IMG/VR virus record: IMGVR_UViG_3300050821_013430
Span: 1-64,000 of that record
Length of the DNA: 64,000 nt
Direction: 5' to 3' (one strand)
The translations under genes were made by a program, and so were the position numbers. The notes under the pieces are model-generated. The model was not told the DNA's origin, did not search any database, and worked only from the letters and a program-made list of their open reading frames with translations. Positions 17,163-61,272 of this stretch are shown piece after piece; the stretch's first letter is position 1, and every line of letters begins with the position of its first letter.

Positions 17163-20100
17163 TTAACCAGCATTAATCGCTGGTGCAAGCCCAAGTAAAT
17201 TGCTTATCTGTAATTGATCCACAAACAGCGGTGTATTCTTAAATCCTGATTTTTTCAAATAAACTATGATTTCGACCTTGGTTGAAAGTGAAAGAATAGT
17301 TGGGTCTGTATATATGTATGCGAAGTCCAAACGCAAAATACCTGTATTTGGATCAATGTAGCACCCCCAACGATCATCGGCAAGAATGCCCTGATAACCA
17401 TCAATACTGACACCATTTAAATTGGGTGAGAGTGCTTGCAAACTAACCGCAAATTTGACACGCCCCAATTCTAAATCGAGGGGCTGTACAAAACTACAGT
17501 CAGAATATCTCACTGCCGGATAGCCGAGACGAGTTATTCCCGTTCCATTATGATCTGATACAAATGTATCGAATATATTTACATTGACTTCTTGACCAAG
17601 AAAAGTATTAGGTATTTCGAGTGTGATAACCTGTGTCTCAAAATCGACAGCATAATTTGATCCATCTGGATTAACAATTTCTCCACCGTTTCCGATAATC
17701 AAATTATTGGGAACATAAACATCGATGCGCCCTGGATCAAAATCCGCAGGAATGGGATATGTTTCGCACTGATTTCCTACCAATGAACAATTATTGATTA
17801 CAAATCCGGTTGGAGTTGTGAAAACTGTTGGAACATATCTCGCATCACCACTTACTACAATGCGGGAAGCGTCCCAAGTAAGTTCTTTGATAATATTGAA
17901 TGCGACTGGATGATCCAAGAAATCGTGATTTTCGAGAGTACCGCCAGTGTATCCATCGAGAGTAAAAATATCTGGTAATGTATGAAGTGTAGTGGCTCTA
18001 TTTCCCGCTTCATTAAGAAAATCATCTGTTCTATCTGGAATTGAATTGGGTATATCTTTATATAGAAAAGGCTCTACTGTTAATGCAATAACATTGAATC
18101 GGGTCCCAATTCTATTTTCCGGAGAAGAAACGGGCGGAAAAGGCGGAGAACGATTTACATAACTTTGTAATAAGTAGCCATCATTTGAATCGACAATAAA
18201 GTCAGCATCAATATCGGCTCTCAGAATTTGACCCATTGTGGAAGCGTTAAGATAAAGTTTTCTAATATCAATGATATGATTACTAGTAATATCTAATGCT
18301 TGAATGAAGAAAGAGCCATTATTTTGTTGGTCTGGTGAGCTAAAAATTACCAAATTGAGATTAGTGAGGTTGGTAACGGTACTAAAATCAATAAACAAAC
18401 TTTCGAAAGAAGCCAATGAGCCATCATTGGGATTAACGGTTAGAATGCCATCAAAACCTGATGCGATTACGTTTGTAGTATTAGGATCGACTAATTGAAA
18501 TGATAAACCAGAATCATTAGTGAATGCATTTACATAAGCATTATAACCATTGATGACGGTAGTATTAATACCATTAGTAGTAATTTGAGAGTTTAGCGGT
18601 GGAGAAGAATTGAGATTAAAGCCAATCAAATTATTGAGAGCTACTACATCATTTTCATCAACAATGCCATCATTATTAACATCGCCATACATCATTGAAC
18701 AAAGAGTTGCGCTTGAGATTCTATAAAATACTGAGGAATCGGAAGCGTCCGGGACAATTTGGGCTCCGGCAAAAGCCCCATTGACAAAATCAGTTACCAG
18801 TGCCAAAACACTGGGATCATAGCGATAACCATCCGTCACATCATCAATAATTTTGATAAAGATTTGATTCTTGAAAAAAGTCCAAGCGTGCAAAGCAGAA
18901 GAAATAGTAGAAGTAGCAATATTATACGATTTGACATTTCCATCTTCGATTATACCAATTGAAAGTGGTTCGGTTGTCGTTTGAAGACTGGAAAAATCAA
19001 GTGGATTTAATAATTGTACAGAAGGGATAAACTCTTGACGAGAATTAATAAGATTACCGGTTCTTTGATCTTGCACCGGCACACTTTGCTGTAGAGTAGC
19101 GGAAAGGACGCTTGTAAAAACATCATTACCAAAAAATGAAACAGCATTAAGAGCAAAATCAGATTGGGCGCCAGTTATTGGGTCAGGGGCAGTTTTAGGA
19201 ATGATTATTCCTTGACCGGTATCATAAGCTTGTCCATCAGAAACTTTGGCTGCATCCGTCCAAACCTGAAACCATAGATTACTTTCTAGAATATCTACCC
19301 AACTAGTACCAGTAAAAGTGGTAACCCATGAATTACTAATTAAAGTTGCGCCAGTGCTAATTAGAATATCACACTGATTAGCTGCGCCAGATCGTTTGAC
19401 TGTAGCCGCATAATAACCACCAGGTTTAATGGCGCTACCATTAGCTATTTGAGTATTGCTAAAAATAAAATCAATGGGCTGAGGGTTACCATCCAACAAA
19501 ATCCCAGCTTGTTGTAATGTATTATAGTTAAAACTAATTTGAGCTAATGGAATATTAGAAGGAGGAAAATTGATAGCTAAATTAGGAACTATGTCAGTAG
19601 GACATTGTATTGCTGATTGTAATGGATAAATACTAATTACCAAATCACCTTGCCAAACTAAATTAGTACTCTGGCCAGGAGCGGTGTTTTGCACCGAAAG
19701 TAGAAGAGTTAATTTTTGGATATTATTAGTGGTGGCTAAAAATTTCTCTCCAATTTGAGTAGTAACATCGTTAGCGGCAATAACAAGATTTTCCTTAATC
19801 GCTGTAAAGATATTAAGGCTATCAGTATTGTAGAGGGGGAGTGAGGCCGCTAAGAAAGTTCCTAAAGTACTACCGTTGGCTACGAAAAAATCTCTGAAAA
19901 ATAAATTAGGTTGCAGGGCCTGCGAAACCATAATAGGATCTCTGGACAAAGAAACCGGAAGTGCTTCTTTGATAACGACTCGTCCACCTAAATTAAGAGA
20001 TTGGGTAGCGGAACCAACAAAATCATTGAATAAAATAAGCAAAATGCTAGTATAATGTTTAGAAGAAATTTGAGTATCATTTTGATCAAAAACAAAAGTA

Positions 20101-20456: not shown

Positions 20457-20501
20457 TGATATCCTTATTACTATGCCTTATTTTTGCTTGTGCCATTATT
20501 T

Positions 20502-23500
20502 TCATCTTGTATAGGTTATGAAAGCGCTCGAATTGGCTGGTTTCAGGATTTCTACCAAGGCCTCAAGTACATTTTGTGCTTGTGGATTCTCAAGTAATAT
20601 ATCGAATGAATCGAACACATCGATTGTAAAATCAAATGATCCATTTTTTAATAGAACAGCAAAGTCTTGGTTTAGAGTAACTAAGGTATTGAAATCTAAC
20701 AATAAAGTAGTGTAAAGGTCTTGGGTAACCGGGAATACTACATTCAAATTACTATTGTAATTGACATCAATTGATTCTCCAAACGGAATAAATAGGGGTC
20801 TAGCGATATCGCTAATCCTAAAATTATCAATCAATGCAAACGCAGGATTTTGTCCGTTGAATTGGCTTCCTAAGTATAACTCATTGAAAGTATCCTTAAA
20901 GTTTATTTCAGCAGCAATACCGCCAATTCCAAGAGTTGTGGCCCCAGCGATGTGGGGGTCTCCAAAAAGTAATCCACTACCGAGGGTTAAGTTGCCTCGT
21001 TCATACCCATCTATGAAAAGCCGAATTTCATCATTAGTAGTACCGCTATTGAAACTATAGGTGGCCTTGACTCGATGCCAAGTGCCCTGAGACCAGAAAG
21101 TCTGACCGCGTAATTTATATTCAATTCCACTAGCCATTACACTAAAATTGACATAGCCAAATGGGTCTTTATAAATGGAAATCCTATCACCTTGTAGTCC
21201 ACTAGGAATATAACTAACTATTACTGGCATATTTTGGGACGGTAGTCTTTTCTTGAGTCTGATAACCTGTCGATTAAGGGCTTTGTTGGCCGCACTTGTT
21301 GGTTTATAGATAACTACTACCGGCAAACTGGCCTGTGGTAATGTAACATCTAGGAAGATGGTATGACCATCCGTTCCGATTGCGCCTTTGTTGAAATAAT
21401 TAGTACCACTTGGGTCTCCAATGATTTTAACTGATATTACTTGTAAAATAGATTGAGAAACAATAACGGTATTAGTATTGAGGCTGGTTGTATTTTCTGA
21501 AATGGCACCAGAAGTATCAAATCCTACACTTCCACCATCAAAATAATCAATTGATTGATCGCCGTGTTGCAATTTAACACTTAATACTCGTCCAACATCT
21601 CCGACTACTTGTACAGCAGTATCATTAATGCTAACTACATTTTCAATAGTAATGCCGCTAGCATCAAAATAATATCGATAGTTAGGATCATTTCCAGTAT
21701 CGAAAATTGGATTGACCCAAAATTCAATAGTCCCTTGTTGTTTAGTATTCAATATCCCGGCATTGTCAATTACTAATGGTTTATCAGTAATATAAACACT
21801 CTGATTAAAATTACTATTGACACTAAATCCAGCCTGCACAAACCCAGTGTTCTGACTAATTACATAATATCTCGCATCATTAGTAAATGGAAAAGTATCA
21901 AAAGTGGTTAGCATTACTGTATTAATGTCATCTTTCAATGGTTTTAATGAATTGAAATCCTTAGTGATAGATTCCTGAGAACTCGGAATTGTTTCTCCGA
22001 CACGGGTATCAGTTAGTTTGATAGAACTGCTCTTTAGAGCGTCAATTAGCCCATCAAATACATTATTACTATTGAAATCAGTACCTAAGAAAGCGTCCTT
22101 GTTAATGGGATCAAGTTTTACGGAAAGGTAAGTATAATAATCAAAATCATAGCGACCCCTGGCTAATGGGTAAGGTTGTCCTGGCGTCAATGCTTGTTCA
22201 AAGAAAAAGAATCCGCTTTGGAAACCACTACGAAAATCACTAGCATTCAATATTTGATAAAATCCACTACTGAACGCTGCCAGCGGGGTGGCTAGTGTTA
22301 GACTATGGTGATCGGCTGAAACTCCAGTAATTTGATAAGTGCCCGCTACCGCAAGCGGTGTTGAGATAACCAAATAATTATTGATATCTGGGGAACTGAA
22401 AAAACTATTTGGGTCAGTAACCACGTTTGTTCCGGAACCGATTAGAGTAGTGCCAGCATCAATTTGATAACTGTACTTAATAGTAGGATAATCGGCATTA
22501 CTATTTTCTGGTACGGTAATAGAAAACTCTTCTTCGACAAACAGAGTCATAAAGGCTTTGGATGTATTATTAGCCATACCACTAACTATTATCGAATTGA
22601 TTCCGGCATATTTATTAACACTATTTTGTGTGCCAAGAGAAGTAAAAGTGATTGTTTCGCTGGAAGGATTTCCGTTGATAGTTACAGAAACTGGTGTGGA
22701 GAAGTTTATATTGTTAGTGCTATTGATTGTAACAGATAAGGTTCGTCCATTGATTGATGTAGATGGTTGATCCGTAGTCAAAGCATTAGAGGTAAAATTA
22801 TTAAGTATCAAAGTAGAATTAGATGAATTGATAATTGTGATGGGAAGGATTTCGTGAAATACATTTACACCCGCTAAGGCTACTGGGATTGGTAAATGAG
22901 TGGCGATAACAGTGCTTCCGCCACTAACGGTTCCGCCGGTACTCATAGTGCCAGTTCCACCAGTACAGCCAGTAAAAATATTGGAAGTAAGACCAGTGTA
23001 AGATACTAATTGAAATCCTTTGTTAGTAAAAACATAAAGTGAGCCAGATGTTGGGAATCCGGCAGTAGATACAACATGGATAGTGGCTTGTGGCAATGTT
23101 TGTCCGTTAGAGCCAACATCAATGGTAGTATCGCCACCCCATTGATAATAGGGTTGTCTTATTCTTCGATGATTGATCCCAAGAGTAATTATATGGATCA
23201 GATCATTGGTATGAGCGTTGTTTGTAATAGTAAGAATATTATTGAAGTTAGCGTCTTTAGTCAAAGTGTAAGACGGATTAACTGCTCGCAGTCCGGGGAT
23301 TTCGACCGGGGTATTGGGATAGACATGGAAAACTGCGTTATTCAATGTTAGGGAAACGGCACTATCCAAAGTCAATGTGTTACCAGAGACTGCCAAGATA
23401 TTGTAATGTGATTGTAAAGTGGGATTTCCATCAATTCGCAGCAAATAACCAGGCACTATGCCGTGAGCAGTAAAATTTATAGAGGCCGAGGATACGGTAG

Positions 23501-26500
23501 CGCTTCCACTTATAGTATTGAGATCGCTTCCATTTAGAGTGGCGCTTATCGTAGAAATCGCAAAATTAGGAAATATATCGATTTCGGTTTGAACAATAAA
23601 AGAAGTTGGATTAACTGAAAATTTACCATTAGTAATAGAAGAAGGCATTGCAGTATTAAGAATAAGGGTTTGTCCCAATACTGTCAAAACCGTATAACCA
23701 CCAGGCGCAAAGCCAGGCTCATTGATAAAAATTGTTGCAGGGGCAACAACACCATATTGATCAAAATTGATGGAAGAAGAAACGCTAGCGGAGCCTGCCG
23801 TGGTAACTAAATCAGTAGAAGATACAACACCATTGGTAATGACTCCGGCAATTTCTTCCGGATCAACAGTACGGAAAAGTTCATGAGGATAAGGCCCAAT
23901 TCTACTACCATACTTTATGATATTGGGTACCTCAAATCCGTCAATGAAAAGATGCAATTCATCTCTTCCATTTTTGGAGTTTAGAATCCAAGACGCGGCG
24001 ACGTGATGGAGATCGTTTATTCTCCATTTAGAAACATCGGCACTGACCGAATAGGCCCGACCGCCATTGTCATACACTCTAAAATTGAAATATCCACTAG
24101 GATCTTTATAAAGGGATAATCGATTTTTATTTTTGTCGATTCCAAAATCTAATAGATAATGATCGAAATCTGCTAGAAAAGTCGCAGCAACATCTAATGG
24201 GACAGGGCCCCTGAAAACAAAAGTAGCCGTACTAATGCCTGATGTGATTTGCAAATCCACAGGTTGTGGTGAAACCACCGATCTTACATCATAAAATTTA
24301 CCATCAGTAGTGATTTTGATATTGTAAATAGTAGAATAACCATCGCTATATCCGTCAGAATAACCATCTACCACTTCTAAATACCAACGATTGAATAATC
24401 CGCTGGCATCGGGCGCATAATAAAGATAAACTCCATCTTTATTTAGATTTGGCAATCCTTGAACTTCTTGTCTTTTATTGGTGGTGAAAGAATTAGAGAT
24501 ATTATATTGGGGATGGTTTTCTGCTGCACCTAGAAAAATCTGATCGGATGGAATTGGAAGTCCATCTTTGGTAATAGTAACAGTCAAATCAGCGTCATTA
24601 TCTAACCCATTCCAATGAGGAGAAACCCAAGTTTGGAAGCTGCCTTGTTCAATTCTCAAATTAGAAGAAGCCGGGAAAGTAATTGTTTGTCCCAACGTAT
24701 CAACTAATACGCCATTACCAAATTTGGCCGGGAGAAGCTGTAAAATGCCGGTAGTTTCGATGGCTCTTGGATTTAACAAACTAGATCCTAAAGACCAATT
24801 TTGGAAAATAGATTCAGTGATCTGCGGCTTGACATGCGAAATTTGTTCTACCAAATTAGTCATCGCTGTTACTGTTGGGCCCTGCAAGAAAGAAGAGAGG
24901 GCCGCACTAAGCGCATCTCGGTATCGCTCTCTGGGTAAATTGATATCCACACTAGTGAGAGCTGGTACATTGATAAGAGAGCCAAAATTATTGATTAGAG
25001 CATTTCGTAATGCGCCAACTTTATAGGTAACATAGTAGACATCATTAGTAGAAACCGTTTCAGATTGTCGAAAATCAATTACATTATCGCCATATTCATA
25101 ACTGATTTCAATTTCATCTGCTAAATAAGTATAATCGATAAAAAGGTCTCCCTTGTTGTAATCTACAATTGCTCTAGAAAGAGCATTGATGGATAAAGTA
25201 TAATTTACCGCCACGGCATCACCAGTTTGTGGTGCATTGGCGCCAGAAAGAATTAATCTTACTCCGTTGCCTAAAACGATAGTACCAGGAATGCTCCAAA
25301 GATTAGCGCTATCTGAAAGACGAACAACATTAACAGTTAGCGTAACATTAGGAGAAAGATATGGTAAATTAAGATTAGTTTGGACATAGTGATTAGTTCC
25401 ATCAAATTCGACCGTGGTATATTGTTGTAAATTGACCGGAGCCAGAGTAATAGTTTGTCCAGAAAAAGTAGCCCCTGATACAAAATTGAAAGGAGTTGTA
25501 CTATTTTTTAGATCATCAAACTCAAAAATGCCACGGATAAAATTGATAGCGTTTGATACTCCTGGAACAAATACTGCCCCCGTGGTGAAAACACCAATTT
25601 GTTGATTAAAAATTTCATAAGGAGCACCAATATTACCGTTGAGAAGAGTTTCATCAGAGGGATCTAAACTTGTTGGTAAGATAAAACCATCTCCAAAATC
25701 AACAAATGTAAAATGCTTATTTTTTGGATTTAATAAACTAATACGGTAGTAGATATCATCAACACTAATAAGATGAGGATTTTGTGGCACGATATTACTA
25801 TTTTTATAACTAATCGTTCCAATGCTAAGGCTTTGACCTATACTAACTGCCACGTAAACAACACCATTTAAATAATCTATTTGATACAGGCCAATTTTGC
25901 TTAGACGCGCGACATTGAGAGTTTCAGTTTCATTTTCATCAAACCATATTTCATTTTGGAAAATATTGGAATTGGAAAAATTTACAGTGCTATTAAGGGA
26001 AAATCCGATACCATCGGCGGTGGCATTTGTTAAACTATTGTTGCTGAGAAAAATCTTGAAAATAGATAGTCCGCCCGTATTAGTTAAAGTTTGATTAACA
26101 AAGAGTAATTCATTTAAAACATCCTGAAAAGAAACTCTTTCTCCCGTTAATTGAGTAATGTTAGGGGGAGTATTATAAGTAAAATAAACAGTATTTTCGT
26201 TCCATCGTAATAGATTATATACTTCTCCGGATGTCTGATTGAAAATTCTAAATACATCAGTGACGGGGCCATTGAGTGTCATAAGTGCGTTTAGTGCTAC
26301 TAATCTATTTTCTATACTTTCAGATAAAGATTCTAAATGCACTTCAGCGCGATAATCAGTACCGGGTATTAAAACTTGTTCATAGTTAAAAGTGATTGTA
26401 GCTGAATTGTTTAGCAAGTTACCAGTCGGAATTGGTGCCACATCATTCGGGGTGGGGTCATAAGCGTAATCTAAATTATTTTGATAAGTAAAAAGATAAT

Positions 26501-27833: not shown

Positions 27834-30800
27834 TAGATTGAAACCTGATTGATAATAATATTATTTGCAACAAAGTATTGATCATTATGGGCTTGCAAAC
27901 TCAATACCTGACCAGGAGAACCATCCAAATTGAATGTTTCAATTCGTGCAGCATTTACTCCGGCTACTGAAAATGCCTTATTAATCAAATTAGAGGCATC
28001 CAAAGTAGTTCCAAGAGAAGTGGCATTAATAGAAGAAATTAGTGTAGATTTAACATTTTGTAATACTAAGTTTGGAACAACATTTGGTTGATTTGACACA
28101 ACAATATCCATGGTGAGATCAATCAAAAGTTCTTTGGCCTCTCTAACTAAAACATCGGCATTGATTGGTCTGCTAGTTTCAATATTGAATGTAGTGGCCG
28201 AAATCAATTGATTATAGTTATACGAAATAGTAATTCTCTCATTGGTTTTTGGAGCAGTATAATCGTAATTAATAGTATACCTTGAACCAGTAATTGGCTG
28301 ATTGAAATTAGCTAATGTGATCTTGGCTGACTGAGAGGAGGTAAATCCGCTAGAAATATAAAACTTGTCGATAAGAGCAAATTGTTTATTGGTATAAAGT
28401 GTTCCATTACGAGTAAAAGTTAGGCTTTCAGTATCTCCAAAAGTAGAATAATAGAAGGTAATGCGAAGACGGTCTCCGATCTTTATTTCATTAGTGCCAA
28501 TATTGTTGATAGTATTTGGCAGAATAAAATCAATCGGACCTAGATTTGGTTTTCTAACAAATTCGGAATCAAAAAAGGTAGTGTCTTGCAAAGCAGATAA
28601 TGCCGTGTCATAAATTACTTCCGTTGTCAATACTTCACTACTAGTAATGGTTGGTGTAGTAACCTTTTCTAATTTTGCTATTTTGATTAGTTTGACATTT
28701 AATGGCACTGTGCTTGCATTTCCCAAATTCAATACTTGTGAAAACGCTCCCAAAGTTGTTTGCTGTAATCCAGTAGCGGTGGCGGTAAAAACAATGTCGG
28801 TTGCTTTAGTAATAGTAGTGCCAATAAAAGAAAGAACGCCCGAATTATTTACTTGATCATTAACATTAACTGCTACGCGGGTGGGCGTACTTCTCAAATT
28901 GGATGGAACATAGTAGAACACAATTACTTCATCCAAATGAGACGCATTGGTAGTTACAGGGAAACTCAATTTATTATTGACTGTATCAATGGTTCCCGCA
29001 TCTGACCATAATTCTTTTCCATCAAGAATCCTAATAACACTAACTTGTCTAGAGCTAATTTCTGCAAAATAATTTCCAATAACAAGTTCATCAGTTTGAG
29101 AATTGAAAGACAAGATATCATAAGTGTTTATATTATTGGGAAAGATCGAGGAAGAAATAGTAATTTTTTTAGAAGTGATATCTAATAGCTGCCCACTGCT
29201 ATTAAAAATATTACCAAACTGAACAGTAGGACTACCGAACAGAGCGGTTGAGGGTGGAGAATTTGGAATAATATAACCATCTACTCCTGAAGCGATAACA
29301 ATATCTGTGTGGGGCTCAAAAATGGTAAAACTGACGTAACCATCTGCCACGAAATCATGAATATCTACCGAAAAATTAATGAGATCAGATTGTAGAGAGC
29401 CCAAATCTCTTTCGATTATTCTATCAGAAAAAGTAAAAGGTTGAAAGCGATTAGTATCATCTGCAAAATAACAAATAAGTACTCGATCTCCGGCACTAGG
29501 AGTATTATAGCCAGTAAAAATCAATTGATAATTAGTAGTTGTGTTGTTGATGGCAATACTACCAGCATTACCAGAATTCCATAATTCAGCGTTATCAGAT
29601 AAACGAATTACTGAAATTACTTGTGACGCTAAAAGCGAAGTATTGGTGCTGGATAAATTGAGTTCTACATACAATTGGTTACTAAGGTTCTTCTGGACAG
29701 GTTGAAAATCCCGTCGCATGGTGTTATCTAAATTTGTATTATTAAAACCAATAGCACTATTAAGTAAATAACCATTAGCCACACGACTAGATGGAAGAGA
29801 TGTGATGCCGGGAGCGAAGAAATTCTGTACATTGGCAATATAAGTAACACTAAGTAGAAGATTGTTAGCGGTGGTGGTGATATTGGATACTGGAATAGTA
29901 ATTTGATTATTTGCTATACTACCAACAGAATTTGTAATATTGAAAGTATCTATTGTATTCCAAAGAATAGTCGCCTTGTCACCTGGTTGGGCCTGCGTAT
30001 CAGTTGGAAGAATTATGGTAGAAGTAAATTCAATTTCGATACCCACTACAATAGTAGAATTGATGAATGTTCCATTATTTTGGGCAGTACTATAAACTTC
30101 GGTTGTAGTATTTTTTAGATAAACATGATCCACGGTATTAGGAGCTACTATCAAATTGGTGACAACTATTGATTGACGTCCAGCATAAATACCAGAAACT
30201 ACTGTTACTACAATTCCATCAATTTCATTGTAAAGGCTGGCAGTAATGACCGAGGAAATTGGATGTTTGGCTACCCCAGTAAATAAAGTGTTACTTCCAT
30301 TACGAGTAAAATTGATTTTTTCTTCTCTTACTAAATTAGAAAAACTCCAATCAGCACTATCAGTAACTACCCGGGGGTTATTGGTATATAATCTGCCATC
30401 ATAATCGGCATATTGATCGTAAGTAATTACCCAATTATAATCTACTTGCAAAATATCATTGAAAGCGGGAAAAGTATTGCCAGAAATCTGAATAACACCA
30501 GAAGTGTTTATGGTACCCGTTCCATTGAAATTTTGGCTAGTAACTGTATAACGTTCTCCGGTAGTAGCATTAAAGACGCGCGTTACGTTGGTTGCGGGAG
30601 TATGCAATAGTTGTATTAGTGATCTATTAGAAGGCAGTACTGTACTATTTTCATTGGTGATAGAAATATTTTGTTGTATTTGCGGTATTTCAATTACGCC
30701 AGGGAAAGTGGTAGCATCCTGCCCGTTGAATTGTCCTTTAATAAGATCTTCTGAAAAATTAATTTGATTACTAATCCAAGCAAAAGTATCAAATCCCCAA

Positions 30801-31939: not shown

Positions 31940-31940
31940 A

Positions 31941-54660: not shown

Positions 54661-55476
54661 CTATGGTGTTGGGGGAGTAAATTCGTACTGTTTGGCCATA
54701 ATGTCTAAGAATTGAATATTGCTGTTTATGGTCAGATTTTTGGCTACTGGGGCAAGCGGATTATGCAAATCAACAAATTCAATAGAAAAATTGATAACAT
54801 CTAGAATATTTGCTATTGGTATTGCCCGCCTCCACTCAGAACGGATATCTATGGTGATAGTTTGTCGAAAGAGCTTATCATTACGATCATCTATTTCCGA
54901 AGGAGATCCCACTACAAGGGGCTTACAAATTACCCCGGCTTTTTGCAAGCTCTTGAAGGCAATATCAGTTAAACAAATACTAACCAAGTCGATCAAATCA
55001 TCACGAGAACGAAGAGAGCGGGTCATAATATCAATAGAAAGGGCCCCTTCCCAGGCACCTGCAAAAATGAAACTGACGGGATTACGGAAAGAAACAGTAT
55101 TGCCATAACCATCAATAAAGGTGCGAAAATCCCATTGAACGGCTCCTTCTTCCCGATTGATAGAGGTAGGTACATATCGTGACCCAGCATTTTTGATCAA
55201 AATGGCAGGATAGAAAATAGAATCGAAACGATAGTTTTCTCCAATGAATAAGCGAGTTGTAACATCGTCATGCAGTCCGGCATCTATTGGAAGATCAGTG
55301 TGGTCTGGCGTATTAGGGAAACCAAAATGATCCTTAGAATAGTGATAATAACTATCACGCTTGAAAAAATTTCGGAGAGTAGCAATGACTATTTCTTTGG
55401 GGTACATTATCATTGAATTTTGTACCACATTATGGATCGAGTAGAGATCGCTCTTGAATACGTTGTTAGTGGCCAT
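54661..55476 (-). CDS. Neck / tail completion protein
   Basis: YPAILIK...SIDIMTRSLRSRDDLIDLV; directly upstream of the sheath gene. Confidence 0.6.
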   Translation of the reverse strand: MATNNVFKSDLYSIHNVVQNSMIMYPKEIVIATLRNFFKRDSYYHYSKDHFGFPNTPDHTDLPIDAGLHDDVTTRLFIGENYRFDSIFYPAILIKNAGSRYVPTSINREEGAVQWDFRTFIDGYGNTVSFRNPVSFIFAGAWEGALSIDIMTRSLRSRDDLIDLVSICLTDIAFKSLQKAGVICKPLVVGSPSEIDDRNDKLFRQTITIDIRSEWRRAIPIANILDVINFSIEFVDLHNPLAPVAKNLTINSNIQFLDIMAKQYEFTPPTP

Positions 55477-55479: not shown

Positions 55480-58400
55480 TTACCATCTATATTGAATAAC
55501 TAATGGTGAAAGTGCCCAAGTTACTGTTGACCCACCAGTATTTACATAGTTCATATCTACGGAAGCCGCAATACGGAAATTGTTGCCTGTTATAAAAGAA
55601 TTTGATGGAAGGCCTGCAGTTATATCGCAATACTGCGTAGCGCTATTAATGGTAGCAGGGGTTACTACTTGATATCCGGCGCCCGCGCTTGCGGCTGTAT
55701 AAGTAATCGTAGTATATTGTAGTGAGGTCCTATTACTGATATCAGAACCGGCGACGATATTATTTTTGACGTCAGCGATACCATTACTGCCCGGCGCTCC
55801 GGATGCGGTTGGATAGTAAGAGTTTAGTGTAAGAGTAATTTGATTATTATTCTGAGAAGACGTTGTGTCCAAACTTCCTATACTGGCTAGCCAAATACCA
55901 AGTTTAGCATCAGTAATTTTGACACCTGATGGTAAAATATCATCCAGAGAAATAGTAAATGAAAAATCTTTATTTCCACTATCTGCTGCGGTGCTAGTTA
56001 TCAAAGTATAATTAGCATTACTAAATTGAGCACCAAAGAATCCAGGAGTTACTCTTTCGACTTGGAAAGTTGCAGAACCAGTGAAGGGGGCAAAAAATGC
56101 CACGGCATTTTGATAGGCCGGACCATTTGGATTAGAACTAATAGCAGTCGCACTTGGAGTGACATAATGAGCATAATCGAGCAATGAAATAGCGGCATAT
56201 CCAGTTTGATTGATATTAGAGTTAGCAACTACAAATAGTGATATATTAGTGATCAAATTAGTATGTAGAGGATTACTGTCTAATGTAGGCTGATCAAAAA
56301 AGTTATTTACGATGGTATGTTGAGAGATAGCAAAAGTGCCAGCACCACTTACATTGTCACCTCCATCAACATAACTACTCCAAGTAGTAGCTCCACGATA
56401 TAGTTTATTACCACTAACAATGGAATTGTTATTGGCTAACGCAATGCCGGTAGGAGAGCCGGGAGAGAATAGAGCGGGAGCCACTCCACTGATGATATTG
56501 TCAGTGATAGTAGCATTTTGACCAGCAAAAATACCGGTGTCGTAACTATATGTAGTAACAGAAGATGTAGGAGGAGATGTAGTAGATTCTTCTCCGGTAT
56601 TGATATGATTTCCAGTAATTAGTACATCGGTAAAATAACTAGCATTGACGTTACCGCCAGTACTCATCGACCCGCCACCAGTAGAAATCAAACTGCATCC
56701 AGTAAAAGAAGTGCTAGTGGTTCCAGAATATGTCACAATTTGGATTCCAGCACTAGTAGTCACGAAGATAGTACCAGAGGTAGGAAAGCCTATAGTGGAA
56801 GCAACATTGATAATAGATTGGGGTAAGAATTGTCCATTAGAAGGTGCAGCAATAGTAGTGAAAATAGCAGTAGGATTGAAGACATGGATCGCGCTATTAT
56901 CCGATGGGCTAGACCCACCATTGAAACTTCTGCGCCAGCTGAAATCAAAGGCGTTTAGGATATTGCTCTTGAAAATTGAGGTGGCTTTATGATCCTTGAT
57001 ATTAGATGAAGCAACTGCAATTGGCATTCTAATCCAAGAGCAAGTATTCTCACTAACAATGATGGCGCCAGAAGTCAAAGAAATTGGAGAACCAGCGGCC
57101 CATTCAGTACCAGTAGAATCGGTAGCCGTAATATATTGGCAAGTATTACCAACGATTCTAAGACTAAAATACTTATCGTATGGTTTTCCAAGATCGGTAT
57201 TGAAAGTGTTTGATGGGGTATCTGCCCTTACCATCGCACTAATTGTTCCGCATTCATTTTTTTCAATCACGCAATTAACGGTCGCTAACATTTCCGAAAG
57301 AGGAGCCGAGGGGGATGGGGGAGCCGTGATAGCAATCATTTGATTCTTATCGCAAATATTCCCACTGATAGTACAATCAACCAATCGCACAGCGGCCGTA
57401 CTGGTGTTACCCGAATTGAGTTTACAAGTGAAAGCGATAGCCGCTCGAATATCGTCCTCAGCGACAAGAGTAGAGAAGGTATTGTTGGAGATATTGACGT
57501 TTTGGAGAATATTACCCGCCGAAGCAAACTCAAAACTAATGAAAGGAAAACGAGCAATCGGATGAGCAAGCGTTGTAACCGTATAAACAAAGTTACAGTT
57601 TGTAATTGAGATATTACGATTGCTGAGATAACCATCAGCTCCGACATTGCTATATATGCAGGCCTTGTTACTATTGATTAGATTAGAGTAAGAAAAGGAA
57701 CCATCGAGAGATGCGTCATATCCGTCATTGAAGGTGATCCCATCAAAATGAACGTTACTTCCAATAATGAACCCGACGGAAGAACTAATATCAAAAATAC
57801 CACCATCACCCTTAAAATAGACAGGGGCAAAGAAATCCAAAGGTACTACGTTGGTAATTGGAAAATGTCCTTTGACCAGAACAGTATTAGAGATAGAGTT
57901 TGCGGTAGTGTTATTGTTAGATACAAATTGAGTTAGTTGTTGGAGCCAGGTAGTAAGAGAGGCAAACGAGCGAAAGCTAGCATTAGCTCCAAGAACAAAA
58001 GGATCAGTTAGACCACCATACCCGTTATAGATGAAGCGGCGGGCGTCCAATGAAGCGGCGGAAACGCTTGCCACCCCGCCAGAAACTGAAGTGTAGCCAT
58101 CTAGCACCGCAATAGGTACCAAATCCTTTTGATTGAGAACTAGATCAGAAAAGTAAGTACCGCGAAGTTGATAGGTATTACTACTAACTGGCTCAATAGC
58201 CCAAAACATTCTAGTGTTGTCTAGAGGAGAATAAGAGGCAGCAAAAGCACCATTGGGATCAAAATCGGTAGATGCGATAGTAACCAATTCACCGCTATCA
58301 CTGACACATAAAAACCAGGTTATATTGGGGACAGTTGTGCTACCACCACCGACTTCTAAATAAACAGCCTCATACACTGCTGGGATAGCCGCTACACTAT

Positions 58401-61272
58401 TATCCAACTGAATAACTTTTCCATTAACAATAGCAGTCCCGCCATTGACAAAAACGTTGTTATTAGCGATAGATACTACATCAAATCCACGAATAACACC
58501 ATTTTCACTCAATAGTTTGGTTGGCGTAGCAATGTAATCGAGAGCGGAGGTAGATAGATCTTTTTCACTGGTATTACCGAATTGCCTCTGATCAATAATG
58601 TATCGAATACGTTTATTTAGATCGTTGACCTGACAGGTGCCTACCAGTAATACTTCGTCGTCTAGGGATAGTGTCGGGAATAACTGAACATCTATGTTTT
58701 GTCCGGCAAAAGTAGGAACATTATCTTTTGGCTCAAAAATAAAATCGATGAAATCAATGTTAGTTTCATCGTAGAACCTGACAGGAATACCGAGTTTGCC
58801 TACGGTGGTAGGCCCAGCATTGGAAGCGGTAGAACCATCCCATCTACGAAGATTACCAGTAAAGATACCAGTAATACTATTGTACGAAGTGATTACTAAA
58901 TTGATTTTTCTAACTGAACCAAATGTATATCCGCGAAGTTTTGGTGATATCTTGTAAAGATTTACAAATTTGATAGCGCTATCAGAATACAACGTGGTAC
59001 TATTGATAGCAATATTGGATCCGGTGATATTGGCCCGACCTCGCTCTTGTGTGAAAGAGTTTCCATTTTGATCAACATATACTTCCATATGTCGGGCAAA
59101 ACCAGTGACTGAGGTATTATCGGAGAGATTTTCTTTGTTGAATCCGACCGAACCAGCATTATAGTACAAACGAACTATTGTACCATTTGGGGCAGAAACG
59201 AAAGGAGATATTCCAGTACTATGAATAGCATCAAAAACAGTAATGGTAGTATATCCCGTATAACCATCACAATTGCAGTTATTAAACTCTACATCGGTGA
59301 TAATAAAACGACCAAAATCAACAATGCTACCGCCTTGCCCAGTTTCTTGTTGTACTACGATAGTATTACCAATTTGTAGGCTAGAATTACTTAGATTGAA
59401 AAGGACTTTATATGTCTTGAAGACGTTGATCCCGGGAACTATCGTTTGATTTGTAATAGTAGCTGGCCAGTAACCATCCCCATAACCATCAATAAGTTGA
59501 TTTGGCTCTAAATTGAAAGAATCTCTCTCCACCCCATTGACATAAAAATTCTTTCGTTTAAGTGGTGGCCAAATAAAAGTTGGTAACTGAGATGCAGTTG
59601 GAATTGCATAAGAGGCGGAGAAAGGCGGACTTGCTACACCAGAACCATTGAGCCCCAATCCTAGAGCATCTTTTGGCGTAAAGACGTCAATTACGTTATT
59701 AGGAAATAGGGTGGCGCTACCACTCGGATCGTAATTGCCACTAGAAGTTACTGCCCCAGCAATAATTGAAAAACTTACATTGTTATAGTGGTCTGCCAAC
59801 ATAAGACCAAATTGACCAAAATAATTATAGGCAATAAAACGATAATTATATCCCTGTATGCGGAAAGCATTATTAATGTTCTGAACAATTGTGTCTAATG
59901 TATAGAGGCCGGGAGAAATCCCCTTTTCACCAGTGATATCAATAGCTGGCAAACTAATAACACCATCGTTTGGATTACCGGTCGGATACAATTGTAAATA
60001 CAAATTGTAATGTTTAGAATCAACTTGATCCGGGACGAAATCAGTTCCGATTACTTGCGCGCCTCGCGCGCTACCGAGAATCAAGGACGGATAAAGATTT
60101 GCGCTAGGATTCCAGGCAGGTGCCAAAGCTAATACACCAGTTTTATCAGTGTTGAATAGGGGTCGATTGACACTAGCAATCGCGGTGGTCGTGGCTAAAA
60201 GATTTTTTCCGTCAATTCTAACTAGAAATGTACCGATCCCGCCGCTAGAAATATATTTCGTTTCACGAATTATGAATGGAAGAACAACACTTCCATAATT
60301 AACCGTAAGAATATCACCAATTCTGATTTGAGCAAATTGTGAATCAAATACATAACCATCATCAGATAATGGGGTAAATCTTACTACATCATCGCCATCA
60401 GTAATGTTATCGACCGGAGTACTGCTACCCCCATCTAAAAGGAAAGTCGTAGCAGTGGTCGGAGGAACAATCAATTGTCCATGCGTTGCATCATTGAAAG
60501 AAGTGGCACGAGCAGTTCTCGGAATACCATTAGCATATAATGTCTGAATCCTAGTACCAAGTAATAGAATACCTGAACTGTCCAAAAAGTCCGCAAGTAA
60601 TTGAACATCTGTCGTAGTCTGAGGGATATAATTGAAAGTCGATACATTAAGATTGATGCCGGAAGCAACGTGAGCATAATTGATTGGTGGGATAGTGCCA
60701 AAGATAGTTCCATCATCTTTTTCATGAGTATTTAGATCGGTATTGATATCGGAAAGTAGAGTGTAAGCATTAGTATTATTTCGCGGCAATCCATACTTGT
60801 TGAGCAAGAAAGGAGTATTCACCATAATAGCACTTAGATCATGAAAATAACCGGTGCCATCGATATGCGGCTCTATTTTGATTCCAGTATCGGCCACAAA
60901 ACTTAAAACTGTTCCCAAATCCAAACTGAAATTGGAAATCATATTAAACAAATCAGCCGTACGATGATCGAGCGTAAGTTTGGATTCTAAGATACCGGCA
61001 GTAGGAGAAATTTGACTATTAGTAATTGGTAAAGAAACTAATCCTGCTGCGGCAATAGCGGATGGTAAAAGATTTCCTGCCGGATCAAGAGAAATACCAA
61101 GGCGAGCAGCTAGTGAGTTGGCCGTTCCGGCAATATTAGTTCCTAATGCGTCTTCGATAGCGAAAATAGCATCTCGGCATTGATCTATTGCCTGGCCTCC
61201 CAGCTCAGTAATAGCGTCATCAACTCGAATGATTGAAATATCATCATCTAAATTTTGGGGGTAATTGCTCAT
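55480..61272 (-). CDS. Large virion fibre protein with beta-helix region
   Basis: 1930 aa; N-terminal YPQNLDD...AIFAIE; repeated ISNN/ISGN/IVGN/ITGN/ITDN beta-helix rungs. Confidence 0.7.
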   Translation of the reverse strand: MSNYPQNLDDDISIIRVDDAITELGGQAIDQCRDAIFAIEDALGTNIAGTANSLAARLGISLDPAGNLLPSAIAAAGLVSLPITNSQISPTAGILESKLTLDHRTADLFNMISNFSLDLGTVLSFVADTGIKIEPHIDGTGYFHDLSAIMVNTPFLLNKYGLPRNNTNAYTLLSDINTDLNTHEKDDGTIFGTIPPINYAHVASGINLNVSTFNYIPQTTTDVQLLADFLDSSGILLLGTRIQTLYANGIPRTARATSFNDATHGQLIVPPTTATTFLLDGGSSTPVDNITDGDDVVRFTPLSDDGYVFDSQFAQIRIGDILTVNYGSVVLPFIIRETKYISSGGIGTFLVRIDGKNLLATTTAIASVNRPLFNTDKTGVLALAPAWNPSANLYPSLILGSARGAQVIGTDFVPDQVDSKHYNLYLQLYPTGNPNDGVISLPAIDITGEKGISPGLYTLDTIVQNINNAFRIQGYNYRFIAYNYFGQFGLMLADHYNNVSFSIIAGAVTSSGNYDPSGSATLFPNNVIDVFTPKDALGLGLNGSGVASPPFSASYAIPTASQLPTFIWPPLKRKNFYVNGVERDSFNLEPNQLIDGYGDGYWPATITNQTIVPGINVFKTYKVLFNLSNSSLQIGNTIVVQQETGQGGSIVDFGRFIITDVEFNNCNCDGYTGYTTITVFDAIHSTGISPFVSAPNGTIVRLYYNAGSVGFNKENLSDNTSVTGFARHMEVYVDQNGNSFTQERGRANITGSNIAINSTTLYSDSAIKFVNLYKISPKLRGYTFGSVRKINLVITSYNSITGIFTGNLRRWDGSTASNAGPTTVGKLGIPVRFYDETNIDFIDFIFEPKDNVPTFAGQNIDVQLFPTLSLDDEVLLVGTCQVNDLNKRIRYIIDQRQFGNTSEKDLSTSALDYIATPTKLLSENGVIRGFDVVSIANNNVFVNGGTAIVNGKVIQLDNSVAAIPAVYEAVYLEVGGGSTTVPNITWFLCVSDSGELVTIASTDFDPNGAFAASYSPLDNTRMFWAIEPVSSNTYQLRGTYFSDLVLNQKDLVPIAVLDGYTSVSGGVASVSAASLDARRFIYNGYGGLTDPFVLGANASFRSFASLTTWLQQLTQFVSNNNTTANSISNTVLVKGHFPITNVVPLDFFAPVYFKGDGGIFDISSSVGFIIGSNVHFDGITFNDGYDASLDGSFSYSNLINSNKACIYSNVGADGYLSNRNISITNCNFVYTVTTLAHPIARFPFISFEFASAGNILQNVNISNNTFSTLVAEDDIRAAIAFTCKLNSGNTSTAAVRLVDCTISGNICDKNQMIAITAPPSPSAPLSEMLATVNCVIEKNECGTISAMVRADTPSNTFNTDLGKPYDKYFSLRIVGNTCQYITATDSTGTEWAAGSPISLTSGAIIVSENTCSWIRMPIAVASSNIKDHKATSIFKSNILNAFDFSWRRSFNGGSSPSDNSAIHVFNPTAIFTTIAAPSNGQFLPQSIINVASTIGFPTSGTIFVTTSAGIQIVTYSGTTSTSFTGCSLISTGGGSMSTGGNVNASYFTDVLITGNHINTGEESTTSPPTSSVTTYSYDTGIFAGQNATITDNIISGVAPALFSPGSPTGIALANNNSIVSGNKLYRGATTWSSYVDGGDNVSGAGTFAISQHTIVNNFFDQPTLDSNPLHTNLITNISLFVVANSNINQTGYAAISLLDYAHYVTPSATAISSNPNGPAYQNAVAFFAPFTGSATFQVERVTPGFFGAQFSNANYTLITSTAADSGNKDFSFTISLDDILPSGVKITDAKLGIWLASIGSLDTTSSQNNNQITLTLNSYYPTASGAPGSNGIADVKNNIVAGSDISNRTSLQYTTITYTAASAGAGYQVVTPATINSATQYCDITAGLPSNSFITGNNFRIAASVDMNYVNTGGSTVTWALSPLVIQYRW

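What the first reader, a model, noticed from the sequence alone, without database searches (positions are those of the whole stretch)
17163..61272. DGY tripeptide enriched in virion proteins: candidate modification or docking motif
Seen: I count 19 DGY in six structural proteins totalling about 8,000 aa. The counts are 4 in 17163..20456, 4 in 20502..27833, 2 in baseplate J, 1 in the sheath, 1 in the neck protein and 7 in 55480..61272. I saw none in the RNR, helicases, sigma factor, tubulin or nucleases. A rough composition estimate gives about 2 expected. In the 1930-aa protein about 7 of 18 DG dipeptides are followed by Y. Tandem copies DGYSDGYSDGYS (24333..24368) and DGYGDGY (59470..59490) use different synonymous codons (GAT GGT TAT TCT GAC GGA TAT AGC), so selection acts on the peptide rather than DNA slippage. 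Inference: a virion-wide short linear motif, for example a Tyr O-glycosylation sequon for the co-transcribed glycosyltransferase, a docking site for a decoration protein, or an Asp-Gly isomerisation/crosslink site.
Basis: partly seen in the sequence, partly recalled or inferred. Interest (0 to 1): 0.85.

Follow-up and report, generated by a model that had tools for sequence, protein, structure and literature searches.

The report
Asp-Gly-Tyr motif on phage tail
In a large group of uncultured giant phages, the three-residue motif Asp-Gly-Tyr is 10-20 times over-represented in the outer tail proteins, keeps arising at new positions, and sits next to a conserved phage sugar-transferase gene, so it is a real selected motif and a good candidate for a new protein-glycosylation site.

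Summary
Shuffles give 1.3 (composition) or 4.4 (doublet-preserving, maximum 13 of 2000). DGY is the top tripeptide outlier in the whole window.

The signal is at the peptide level. Codons follow genome usage, and the pattern is in frame 367 times against 3-14 in other frames. It is order- and residue-specific: NGY, EGY, DGW and the permutations GDY, DYG, YGD and GYD are about 1x, DGF 1.8x, YDG 2.5x.

The window is part of a 473-kb IMG/VR jumbo-phage contig. More than 100 relatives at 30-55% identity show the same enrichment:
- Upstream of a conserved GT4 glycosyltransferase: 838 DGY against 48 expected.
- Downstream non-structural genes: 20 against 33 expected.
- T4 and phage G controls: no enrichment.

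Alignment columns give 100-124 distinct sites, most lineage-specific, with nearly free flanks and no single secondary-structure context.

The motif is not virion-wide. It marks peripheral tail proteins only.

GT4 directly follows the fibre genes in nearly all relatives. Three lineages lacking it there have zero DGY in the fibre.

Best reading, at moderate confidence: an exposed short linear motif serving as the acceptor site for the phage's own glycosyltransferase. Docking-site and structural readings remain open.

The parts
17163..20456 (-). 1097-aa distal tail-fibre-like protein. It has 4 DGY, all beyond residue 540, and dockerin/EF-hand-like loops at 590-616 and about 745-770.
   Evidence: Its 120 homologues hold 620 DGY against 25.7 expected, and 615 of these lie beyond residue 500.
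20502..27833 (-). 2443-aa tail protein with a LamG/ConA-like domain; 4 DGY.
   Evidence: There are 27 distinct DGY sites among 7 orthologues. Sites 1156 and 2275 are conserved in 7 of 7.
27833..31939 (-). Baseplate wedge protein (J-like N-terminus, residues 1-280) with a long C-terminal extension that carries 2 DGY.
   Evidence: All ortholog sites lie at residues 574-943, outside the J domain.
51710..54520 (-). Tail sheath; 1 DGY at residue 419.
   Evidence: Site 419 is conserved in 36 of 39. All 15 ortholog sites lie at residues 148-614, and none lies in the conserved C-terminal core (637-936).
54661..55476 (-).
   Evidence: conserved in 31 of 33.
55480..61272 (-). 1930-aa giant protein with beta-helix-like repeats; 7 DGY.
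   Evidence: (37 distinct DGY sites among 20 orthologues).
18825..18833 (-). DGY 542 of the 1097-aa protein.
   Evidence: In the model it lies in a confident loop between a strand and a helix.
18174..18182 (-). DGY 759 of the 1097-aa protein.
   Evidence: Asp is the 12th residue of a dockerin-like Ca loop, and Gly-Tyr begin the helix. Present in 20 of 34 orthologues.
17949..17957 (-). DGY 834 of the 1097-aa protein.
   Evidence: It lies in a low-confidence loop. Present in 27 of 34.
17394..17402 (-). DGY 1019 of the 1097-aa protein.
   Evidence: It lies in a long low-confidence loop. Present in 25 of 34.
24336..24368 (-). Tandem DGYSDGYSDGYS (residues 1156-1167 of the 2443-aa protein).
   Evidence: The copies are conserved in 7/7, 5/7 and 1/7 orthologues.
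21003..21011 (-). DGY 2275 of the 2443-aa protein (context IRLFIDGYERGN).
   Evidence: 7/7.
29336..29344 (-). DGY 866 of the baseplate protein.
   Evidence: 1/9, specific to the window.
29273..29281 (-). DGY 887 of the baseplate protein.
   Evidence: 6/9.
53258..53266 (-). DGY 419 of the sheath.
   Evidence: inside the strand run 405-424 of the model.
55105..55113 (-). DGY 122 of the 271-aa protein.
60352..60360 (-). DGY 305 of the 1930-aa protein.
   Evidence: 1/20.
59470..59490 (-). DGYGDGY (residues 595-601 of the 1930-aa protein).
   Evidence: 12/20 and 18/20.
59260..59268 (-). DGY 669 of the 1930-aa protein.
   Evidence: 2/20.
58093..58101 (-). DGY 1058 of the 1930-aa protein.
   Evidence: 1/20.
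57718..57726 (-). DGY 1183 of the 1930-aa protein.
   Evidence: 1/20.
57628..57636 (-). DGY 1213 of the 1930-aa protein.
   Evidence: 1/20.
16032..17153 (-). GT4-type (GT-B, Glycos_transf_1) glycosyltransferase. It is soluble and keeps the E-x7-E signature. It starts 9 bp after the fibre gene's stop.
   Evidence: It is syntenic in more than 100 relatives.
14169..15200 (-). Conserved 343-aa protein of unknown function in the same cassette.
13243..14169 (-). NDP-sugar 4,6-dehydratase (dTDP-glucose dehydratase-like).

Best explanation
DGY is a positively selected short linear motif displayed on the exposed, fast-evolving parts of the outer tail. These parts are the sheath's outer domains, the C-terminal extension of the baseplate wedge, the two giant fibre-like proteins downstream of it, the 1930-aa protein and the 271-aa protein.

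The most likely mechanism is that it is the acceptor site ('sequon') for the phage's own soluble GT4 glycosyltransferase, which is encoded directly after the fibre genes. In most relatives GT4 is followed by two GT2 enzymes and an NDP-sugar 4,6-dehydratase. On this reading, newly made tail proteins are glycosylated in the cytoplasm, probably on the Tyr hydroxyl with Asp at -2 and Gly at -1 as recognition elements. This would give the outside of the tail a glycan coat used for shielding or adhesion.

Shown here:
- The enrichment itself, and that it acts on the peptide.
- The order and residue specificity.
- The recurrent gain of new sites.
- The restriction to one class of proteins.
- The synteny with GT4.
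- The loss of DGY where the adjacent GT4 is lost.

Inferred only: that any modification occurs, that Tyr is the acceptor, and that GT4 is the enzyme.
For: 1. Strength and specificity.
- Window: 19 observed against 1.3 and 4.4 expected.
- Relatives: DG[Y] 6.6x, [D]GY 6.2x, D[G]Y 5.2x. NGY is 0.84x, EGY 0.86x, DGW 0.43x and DGF 1.8x. Four of the five permutations (GDY, DYG, YGD, GYD) are about 1x; YDG is 2.5x.

2. Peptide rather than DNA.
- Codons within DGY match genome codon usage.
- GAYGGNTAY occurs 367 times in frame against 3-14 in each of the other five frames.

3. Recurrent gain.
- There are 100 distinct alignment sites in six protein families, and 64 are lineage-specific.
- Sites per expected occurrence is 4.39, against a median of 0.50 and a next-best value of 1.63 among 3443 tripeptides.
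- The larger fibre alignment has 37 sites.

4. SLiM-like anatomy.
- Flanks are nearly unconstrained.
- Tandem and clustered copies are common.
- Sites occur in loops, a hairpin, a helix N-terminus and a strand, so there is no single structural context.

5. Protein-class restriction within the same genomes.
- Upstream of GT4: 838 against 48.4 expected (17x; 42% of DG are followed by Y).
- Downstream: 20 against 32.7 expected.
- Inner-tail proteins have essentially none.
- Sites avoid the conserved cores.

6. Clade specificity. Phage G has 2 against 1.8 expected, and T4 has 5 against 2.4.

7. Link to GT4.
- The gap is 9 bp with no terminator.
- GT4 is soluble and keeps E-x7-E.
- All 36 fibre-ascertained loci that extend far enough carry GT4.
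- GT4 orthologues were found in 106 viral contigs.
- Deep relatives with only 28-30% GT4 identity are still DGY-rich. L187 has 24 DGY in 4090 aa with GT4 as its only sugar gene; L188 has 18.
- Lineages with no GT4 after the fibre have 0 DGY in the fibre: L184, L183/L191 and the P0188 contig (0 of 6, 15, 10 and 10 DG). They are nested among DGY-rich sisters.
Against: - No modification has been observed.
- Tyr O-glycosylation by a GT4 enzyme has no precedent that I know of (own knowledge).
- The coupling is not strict. Genomes with the full cassette can be DGY-poor: L181 has 4 in 4641 aa, L116/L117 have 2 in 2398 aa, and L185 and L186 have none in the fibre.
- L191 lacks the adjacent GT4 yet has a 1102-aa ORF with 3 DGY among 9 DG. 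GT4 could lie elsewhere in that rearranged genome.
- The co-loss cases are few (3-4 lineages) and were found by looking up zero-DGY proteins.
- The cassette could instead modify DNA or host glycans. In relatives it contains an Fpg/Nei DNA glycosylase and lies beside replication genes.
- Some conserved DGY sites have a plausible purely structural role, for example D759 in a dockerin-like Ca loop and DGY 419 inside a strand.
Confidence: 0.4

Rival explanations
1. DGY is a docking motif. It is bound non-covalently by a clade-specific partner, such as a decoration protein, a fibre-assembly chaperone or another tail component. The neighbouring glycosyltransferase has an unrelated job.
For: The same SLiM-like properties apply: a strict core, free flanks, tandem copies, turnover, and restriction to peripheral tail proteins of one clade. 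GT4-positive but DGY-poor genomes fit a partner other than GT4.
Against: No candidate partner was identified. The loss of DGY in lineages lacking the adjacent GT4 would then be coincidence. Three residues with free flanks is very little surface for specific protein binding.
Confidence: 0.2
2. DGY is a clade-specific structural micro-motif. The Asp caps a turn or binds Ca2+, the Gly allows the backbone angle, and the Tyr packs on the surface. It was inherited and re-invented because it is a cheap way to build the beta-sandwich and beta-helix domains of these proteins. No modification or partner is involved.
For: - Hydrophobic residues are mildly preferred at -3, and Pro is avoided at +1.
- Ortholog site 628 is a tight hairpin turn.
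- D759 fits the 12th position of a dockerin-like Ca loop.
- Several sites are highly conserved: sheath 419, the 271-aa protein's 122, and 1156 and 2275 of the 2443-aa protein.
- A shared 95-aa domain is a hot spot.
Against: - Turn propensity predicts NG at least as much as DG, and F/W alongside Y. Observed values are NGY 0.84x, DGF 1.8x and DGW 0.43x, against 8.4x for DGY.
- Secondary-structure contexts are heterogeneous.
- Tandem DGYDGY and DGYSDGYSDGYS cannot all be hairpin turns.
- Beta-rich tail proteins of T4 and phage G show no enrichment.
- Inner-tail beta-rich proteins of the same phages lack the motif.
- 64 singleton gains replace unrelated residues.
Confidence: 0.2
3. DGY is itself a ligand-binding patch. 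Asp plus Tyr contact host polysaccharide or a metal ion such as Fe3+ or Ca2+. Many weak copies along the tail would give avidity for the host surface.
For: The sites are exposed, variable and multiple, and lie on proteins that face the cell. Asp and Tyr are common sugar and metal ligands (general knowledge). Weak structural matches are to CBM/lectin-like beta-sandwiches.
Against: The strict order and the obligatory Gly are hard to explain for a side-chain patch. YGD, GDY and DYG are all about 1x. The motif also occurs on the sheath and the 271-aa protein, far from the receptor-binding tips.
Confidence: 0.1
4. The signal is an artefact of chance, composition, DNA repeats, or a few conserved sites counted many times.
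For: Orthologous sites are not independent, and tandem copies inflate the counts. Tandem units 1 and 3 are identical DNA.
Against: - DGY is the rank-1 outlier after doublet-preserving shuffles and after collapsing tandem copies.
- Column-dereplicated site counts are still 4.4x, against at most 1.6x for every other tripeptide.
- There is no out-of-frame signal.
- The enrichment replicates in 120 + 60 further homologues.
Confidence: 0.01

Closest known systems
Mycobacteriophage virion glycosylation by phage-encoded glycosyltransferases (Freeman et al. 2023, as summarised in PMC12619734)
   Same: Phage-encoded GTs are proposed to glycosylate the phage's own structural proteins in the cytoplasm, giving a surface glycan coat.
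   Different: In that system the glycans are at the C-termini of the capsid and tail-tube subunits (PMC12619734). Here the candidate sites are a dispersed internal tripeptide on outer tail proteins. The acceptor would be Tyr, nothing has been shown biochemically, and the phages are unrelated 350-480-kb jumbo phages.
Short bacterial glycosylation sequons: Bacteroidota O-glycosylation D-(S/T)-(A/I/L/V/M/T) and Campylobacter PglB D/E-X-N-X-S/T (own knowledge, not tested here)
   Same: These are three- to five-residue motifs in which an acidic residue next to, or two positions before, the acceptor is part of recognition. Flanks are free and the sites are exposed.
   Different: Those systems use membrane oligosaccharyltransferases acting outside the cytoplasm on Ser/Thr or Asn. 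Here the enzyme would be a soluble GT-B enzyme acting on Tyr.
Cytoplasmic sequential glycosylation of serine-rich-repeat adhesins (GtfA/GtfB of family GT4, followed by further GTs; own knowledge)
   Same: A soluble GT4 starts protein O-glycosylation in the cytoplasm, and other GTs encoded alongside extend the glycan. The cassette here has the same make-up: GT4 plus two GT2 enzymes plus a sugar-nucleotide enzyme.
   Different: The acceptors there are Ser/Thr in long repeats. No specific sequence relationship of this GT4 to GtfA was found. The best solved-structure matches are an unnamed glycosyltransferase (7mi0), glycogen synthase, and weakly the chlorovirus GT B736L.
Tyrosine O-glycosylation (glycogenin; Photorhabdus/Yersinia Rho-modifying toxins, PMC4518317 and PMC11152714; Tyr-linked S-layer glycans, own knowledge)
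   Same: Tyr hydroxyl as the glycan acceptor.
   Different: The enzyme families differ (GT8 or GT-A-type toxins, or membrane O-oligosaccharyltransferases). No DGY context is known, and a full-text search for 'DGY motif' found no paper.
Type I' Asp/Asn-Gly beta-turns and EF-hand/dockerin DxDxDG loops
   Same: Asp-Gly is a classic turn and Ca-loop dipeptide. One or two DGY sites sit in such loops (759 in the window, 752 and 628 in orthologues).
   Different: These motifs do not require Tyr, and they tolerate or prefer Asn. They are universal in beta-rich proteins. The DGY excess is Tyr- and Asp-specific and clade-specific.

Membership tests
Protein glycosylation system with a short sequon | A dedicated glycosyltransferase is encoded with, and co-expressed with, its substrates. 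| tested here: met
   GT4 lies 9 bp downstream of the fibre gene on the same strand with no terminator. Synteny holds in 36 of 36 fibre-ascertained loci and in 77 further loci. Co-expression itself is inferred.
Protein glycosylation system with a short sequon | The enzyme appears catalytically competent and is in the same compartment as the substrate. | tested here: met
   Glycos_transf_1/GT4 matches. The E-x7-E block is conserved in 16 orthologues. No hydrophobic segment is present (maximum Kyte-Doolittle value 1.01).
Protein glycosylation system with a short sequon | The motif contains an acceptor residue, is enriched in substrates relative to non-substrates, and has free flanks. | tested here: met
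   Tyr is obligatory (DGF 1.8x, DGW 0.43x). Enrichment is 17x upstream of GT4 against 0.6x downstream. Flanks are free.
Protein glycosylation system with a short sequon | Motif and enzyme co-vary across genomes. | tested here: inconclusive
   Three lineages without the adjacent GT4 have 0 DGY in the fibre. Against that, several GT4-positive genomes are DGY-poor, L191 still has 3 DGY in another ORF, and whole genomes were not available.
Protein glycosylation system with a short sequon | A glycan is covalently attached at the motif. | not testable with these tools
   This needs mass spectrometry or an in vitro transfer assay.
Type I' beta-hairpin turn (Asn/Asp-Gly) | Asn-Gly is at least as favoured as Asp-Gly, and the following residue is any beta-former. 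| tested here: not met
   NGY 0.84x against DGY 8.4x. DGI, DGV, DGF and DGW are 0.4-1.8x.
Type I' beta-hairpin turn (Asn/Asp-Gly) | The motif sits in a two-residue turn between adjacent antiparallel strands. | tested here: not met
   The four window sites in the fibre model are a strand-to-helix loop, a helix N-terminus and two long loops. Sheath site 419 lies within a strand run. Only ortholog site 628 is a tight hairpin. The models are predictions.
EF-hand / dockerin Ca2+ loop (DxDxDG...D) | Asp/Asn residues occur at the spaced ligand positions around the DG. | tested here: not met
   Over 124 sites, acidic residues are 0.6x at -2 and 1.4x at -4 (Asp alone 1.7x at -4). Only site 759 (and 752 in orthologues) lies in a dockerin-like loop.
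DNA-level repeat or sequence signal | The nucleotide pattern is over-represented regardless of reading frame, or there is codon bias beyond genome usage. | tested here: not met
   367 in frame against 3-14 in each other frame. GATGGTTAT makes up 26% of DGY codon triplets, against 28% expected from codon usage.
Diversity-generating retroelement target | A reverse transcriptase and a template repeat lie nearby, and variability is focused on Asn (AAY) codons. | tested here: inconclusive
   Pfam scans of the window's ORFs of 100 aa or more found no reverse transcriptase. Only 64 of 473 kb was examined and no template-repeat search was run. A DGR would not favour one ordered tripeptide.

The most novel reading that the evidence does not exclude
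DGY is the sequon of a previously unknown cytoplasmic tyrosine O-glycosylation system. A phage GT4 enzyme starts the glycan and GT2 enzymes extend it with a deoxy-sugar-containing chain. The system coats the outer tail surface of a widespread clade of 350-480-kb jumbo phages. Sites are continually gained and lost as the exposed domains evolve.
Probability: 0.35. Interest if true: 0.9.

Novelty: new variant of a known kind. Interest (0 to 1): 0.72.

Why it matters
If DGY is a glycosylation sequon, it would be the first defined acceptor motif for glycosylation of a phage virion, and a new enzyme-acceptor pairing (a GT4 acting on Tyr). It would also show that huge uncultured phages invest in a glycan coat on their tails, which bears on host recognition, immune or defence evasion and environmental stickiness. 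A minimal three-residue tag recognised by a soluble enzyme would be a useful tool for glyco-engineering.

Even if the function turns out to be different, this is an unusually clean case of a three-residue motif under recurrent positive selection in one class of viral proteins. It is directly testable with a peptide and one recombinant enzyme.

Tried and rejected
Explanations rejected:
- DNA-level motif: rejected.
- Generic 'beta-rich proteins have DG turns': rejected by the NGY, DGF and DGW ratios and by the T4 and phage G controls.
- Antibody-CDR-like enrichment of sticky Y/G/D residues in any order: rejected, since four of the five permutations are about 1x and YDG only 2.5x.
- One repeated domain carrying a conserved DGY: rejected as a general explanation. 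Only limited paralogy exists among the six proteins, and the flanks show no extended consensus.
- Avoidance of DGY in non-virion proteins: not claimed. DG[Y] is 0.52x there, but Pro, Trp, Leu and Val after DG are equally low.

Searches that led nowhere:
- No cultured phage relative.
- Single-protein scans for GT4 and the fibre found only the source contig. Alignment queries were needed.
- Fold search of the fibre model gave only weak jelly-roll/CBM-like matches.
- No solved-structure relatives for the 1930- and 2443-aa proteins.
- The 343-aa cassette protein remains unknown.
- DNA around the GT4-less P0188 and P0144 lineages could not be fetched. The P0140 scan returned only other clade members.
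- The Freeman 2023 paper is not held in the library.
Full report
**Observation**

All genes in the window lie on the minus strand.
- 19 DGY in six proteins totalling 8045 aa.
- None in any ORF at 2112..17153. These include the sigma factor, DnaB- and UvsW-like helicases, TubZ/PhuZ-like tubulin, a GH25 lysozyme and endonucleases.
- None in several other structural ORFs: the tape-measure-like, tube-initiator-like, 1602-aa, 654-aa, 715-aa and 564-aa proteins.

Expectation in the six proteins is 1.3 from composition and 4.25 from a first-order Markov model. DGY is the single strongest tripeptide outlier in the six proteins, in all structural ORFs and in the whole window. In 2000 shuffles per model the composition-only mean was 1.30 (maximum 6) and the doublet-preserving mean was 4.43 (maximum 13). 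The observed count is 19, or 16 after collapsing tandem copies. In DGYSDGYSDGYS, units 1 and 2 differ at 5 of 12 nt, and units 1 and 3 are identical.

**Where the window comes from, and relatives**

The window is positions 1-64000 of IMGVR_UViG_3300050821_013430, a 472,749-bp contig. No GenBank phage is close. Only the core sheath and baseplate-J domains match distantly, for example in Bacillus phage G. Viral-contig scans with the sheath, the baseplate protein, an alignment of the 1097-aa protein and an alignment of the glycosyltransferase returned about 180 loci. Many come from 350-480-kb contigs, at 36-57% identity. The protein databases add 721 homologues of the 1097-aa protein, but only 164 clusters at the 50% level in 1.84 billion representatives. 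This is therefore one well-delimited clade.

**The enrichment is a property of the clade and of the peptide**

Almost every locus that covers the relevant genes shows the excess. Pooled over relatives:
- Y follows DG 6.6 times more often than its frequency predicts.
- D precedes GY 6.2 times more often, and G sits between D and Y 5.2 times more often.
- NGY is 0.84x, EGY 0.86x, SGY 1.0x, DGW 0.43x and DGF 1.8x. Of the five permutations of D, G and Y, four are 0.7-1.3x and YDG is 2.5x.
- Codon choice inside DGY equals genome usage.
- The degenerate nucleotide pattern occurs 367 times in frame against 3-14 times in each of the other five frames.

Selection therefore acts on the ordered tripeptide.

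**Conservation or turnover?**

Both occur. Some sites are nearly fixed:
- Sheath 419, in 36 of 39.
- Residue 122 of the 271-aa protein, in 31 of 33.
- Residues 1156 and 2275 of the 2443-aa protein, in 7 of 7.
- Residue 599 of the 1930-aa protein, in 18 of 20.

Mapping every DGY to its alignment column nevertheless gives 100 distinct sites in the six families, and 64 of them occur in a single sequence. These often stand opposite unrelated residues such as SST, TLN or MIV. Measured as sites per expected occurrence, DGY scores 4.39. The median tripeptide scores 0.50 and the next best 1.63, out of 3443 tripeptides. For singleton sites DGY scores 2.81, against 0.35 and 1.34. The 34-sequence fibre alignment alone has 37 sites. 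DGY is therefore gained again and again at new positions.

**Anatomy of the motif**

Across 124 dereplicated sites the flanks are almost free:
- Hydrophobic residues at -3, 1.4x.
- Small residues at -1, 1.4x.
- Charged residues depleted at -1 and +1.
- Gly 2x and Pro 0.2x at +1.

Copies are often tandem or clustered, for example DGYDGY, DGYAVDGY, DGYIVDGY, DGYCMLDGY and DGYAGTDGYVVPTITPGDGYF.

Sites avoid the conserved cores:
- Sheath: all 15 sites lie at residues 148-614 and none in the conserved C-terminal core.
- Baseplate protein: all sites lie beyond the J domain.
- 120 fibre homologues: 615 of 620 DGY lie beyond residue 500.

A 95-aa domain shared by the sheath and the fibre is a hot spot.

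In an AlphaFold model of the fibre (pLDDT 79), the four DGY of the window lie in different contexts:
- A confident strand-to-helix loop (542).
- The end of a dockerin-like Ca loop at a helix N-terminus (759).
- Two low-confidence loops (834 and 1019).
- Ortholog site 628 is a tight hairpin.

In the sheath model (pLDDT 63, good in the outer domains), DGY 419 lies within a strand run. There is thus no common secondary-structure context.

**Controls**

Within the same genomes, proteins upstream of the glycosyltransferase hold 838 DGY against 48.4 expected (17x; 42% of DG are followed by Y). Proteins downstream hold 20 against 32.7 expected. The low downstream value is not special, because Pro, Trp, Leu and Val after DG are equally low there. 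Structural proteins of phage G (2 against 1.8 expected) and T4 (5 against 2.4 expected, including the long tail fibres) show no comparable excess. A full-text search for 'DGY motif' found no paper.

**The neighbouring sugar genes**

Nine bp downstream of the fibre gene, with no terminator-like site between them, lies a GT4/GT-B glycosyltransferase. It is soluble and keeps the E-x7-E block. Next come a conserved 343-aa protein of unknown function and an NDP-sugar 4,6-dehydratase.

Relatives carry the order GT4 - GT2 - (Fpg/Nei glycosylase) - unknown - GT2 - dehydratase - tubulin. The window and a few relatives lack the two GT2 genes. In the window an HNH-type endonuclease ORF sits in their place. 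All 36 fibre-ascertained loci that extend far enough have GT4, and 106 viral contigs carry an orthologue.

**Does DGY track GT4?**

Distant fibre homologues (29-38% identity) are still about 10x enriched overall, but some have no DGY at all. Looking up the contigs gave the following.

DGY-rich distant relatives have GT4 directly after the fibre genes:
- L187 has 24 DGY in 4090 aa, and GT4 is its only sugar gene.
- L188 has 18 DGY and a large cassette.

Zero-DGY fibres fall into two groups.
- Fibres with no GT4 after them:
  - L184, with the order fibre - unknown - dehydratase.
  - L183 and L191, with the order Gp80 - VapE - fibre - unknown - dehydratase.
  - The P0188 contig, with the order fibre - 104 aa - UvsW helicase and no cassette.
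  - L182, which is ambiguous because its contig ends 2 kb after the fibre. It has 1 DGY in 4600 aa.
- Fibres in genomes that keep GT4, where the neighbouring tail proteins still hold 3-5 DGY: L181, L185 and L186.

On a tree of the fibre N-terminal domain, the GT4-less zero-DGY lineages form at least three separate groups nested among DGY-rich sisters.

Counting only clear cases, GT4 is absent in 3 of 6 zero-DGY look-ups and in 0 of 38 DGY-bearing loci. That is roughly p = 0.002 by hand, ignoring phylogeny.

Counter-evidence:
- Some cassette-positive genomes are DGY-poor (L116/L117 with 2 in 2398 aa, and L181).
- L191 has a 1102-aa ORF with 3 DGY.

**Interpretation**

Chance, composition and DNA repeats are excluded. 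A generic structural turn is hard to reconcile with five observations:
- The Asp and Tyr specificity.
- The heterogeneous structural contexts.
- The tandem copies.
- The absence of the excess in other myoviruses.
- Its absence in inner-tail proteins of the same phages.

The data fit a short linear motif on exposed tail surfaces that is read by a clade-specific factor. The only candidate factor visible is the conserved, co-oriented GT4, with its variable escort of GT2 enzymes and a sugar-nucleotide enzyme. I therefore favour a glycosylation sequon at confidence about 0.4, with Tyr as the only hydroxyl acceptor in the motif. The alternatives are a docking site for an unidentified partner (0.2), a lineage-specific structural or Ca-binding micro-motif (0.2), and a direct ligand-binding patch (0.1). 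The cassette could also serve DNA or host-glycan modification, in which case its adjacency to the fibre genes would be coincidental.

**Comparison with known systems**

Phage-encoded glycosylation of virions is known in mycobacteriophages, where the glycans are at the C-termini of capsid and tail-tube proteins (summarised in PMC12619734). From my own knowledge, short bacterial sequons with an acidic residue near the acceptor are known, as are cytoplasmic GT4-initiated pathways. A DGY motif, a Tyr acceptor for a GT4, and a dispersed, rapidly turning-over sequon on tail proteins are not described.

I rate this as a new variant of a known kind, unproven, and directly testable with one enzyme and one peptide.

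Noticed in passing
window 10898-11809, 15254-16081, 44054-44746, 48926-49963, 50721-51650 (all on the minus strand): Five paralogous HNH/EndoVII-type homing-endonuclease-like ORFs share a C-terminal block (...SMEDENFKKCWALENLRPL.AKQ). This block explains the KCW and CWA tripeptide outliers. Three of the ORFs interrupt the tail operon. One (15254-16081) sits where relatives carry a GT2 gene, and relatives carry copies at other positions.
   Followed up: partly
window 13243-17153; relatives such as L092:13646-19589: A conserved sugar cassette lies right after the tail-fibre genes: GT4, two GT2 enzymes, a protein of unknown function and an NDP-sugar 4,6-dehydratase. In many relatives an Fpg/Nei DNA glycosylase is embedded in it. 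The window genome has lost both GT2 genes.
   Followed up: yes
window 17163-20456, residues 590-616 and about 745-770: Two dockerin/EF-hand-like Ca-binding loops in the fibre protein (consensus YGDVNGDGIID..DL.LL and LRADIDGDF.IT..DGYLL). This is an unusual module for a phage fibre.
   Followed up: partly
window 51710-54520 residues 491-586 and 17163-20456 residues 644-736; 20502-27833 residues 1569-1624 and 55480-61272 residues 1472-1527: Domain sharing between tail proteins. A beta-sandwich domain of about 95 aa is common to the sheath and the fibre (34% identity). A 56-aa segment is 59% identical between the two giant proteins, which suggests a recent exchange.
   Followed up: partly
window 61829-62629 (minus strand): A 266-aa ORF with 32% glycine and no family match.
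   Followed up: no
window 11812-13173 (minus strand): A TubZ/PhuZ-like tubulin that is 60-68% identical across the clade. It is one of the best conserved genes near the cassette.
   Followed up: no
L191:1849-5160 (minus strand): The large subunit of ribonucleotide reductase in a distant relative carries an intein with a LAGLIDADG domain (precomputed Pfam hits).
   Followed up: no
L191:21135-24443 (minus strand): In a lineage whose fibre has no DGY and no adjacent GT4, a 1102-aa ORF of unknown function still has 3 DGY among 9 DG. It is unexplained and bears on the GT4 link.
   Followed up: no
window 34304-36451 (minus strand): Orthologues of this 715-aa tail protein carry a conserved DGY at the position aligned to residue 631 (7 of 10). 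The window has DGV there, so this family also belongs to the DGY set even though the window copy has none.
   Followed up: partly
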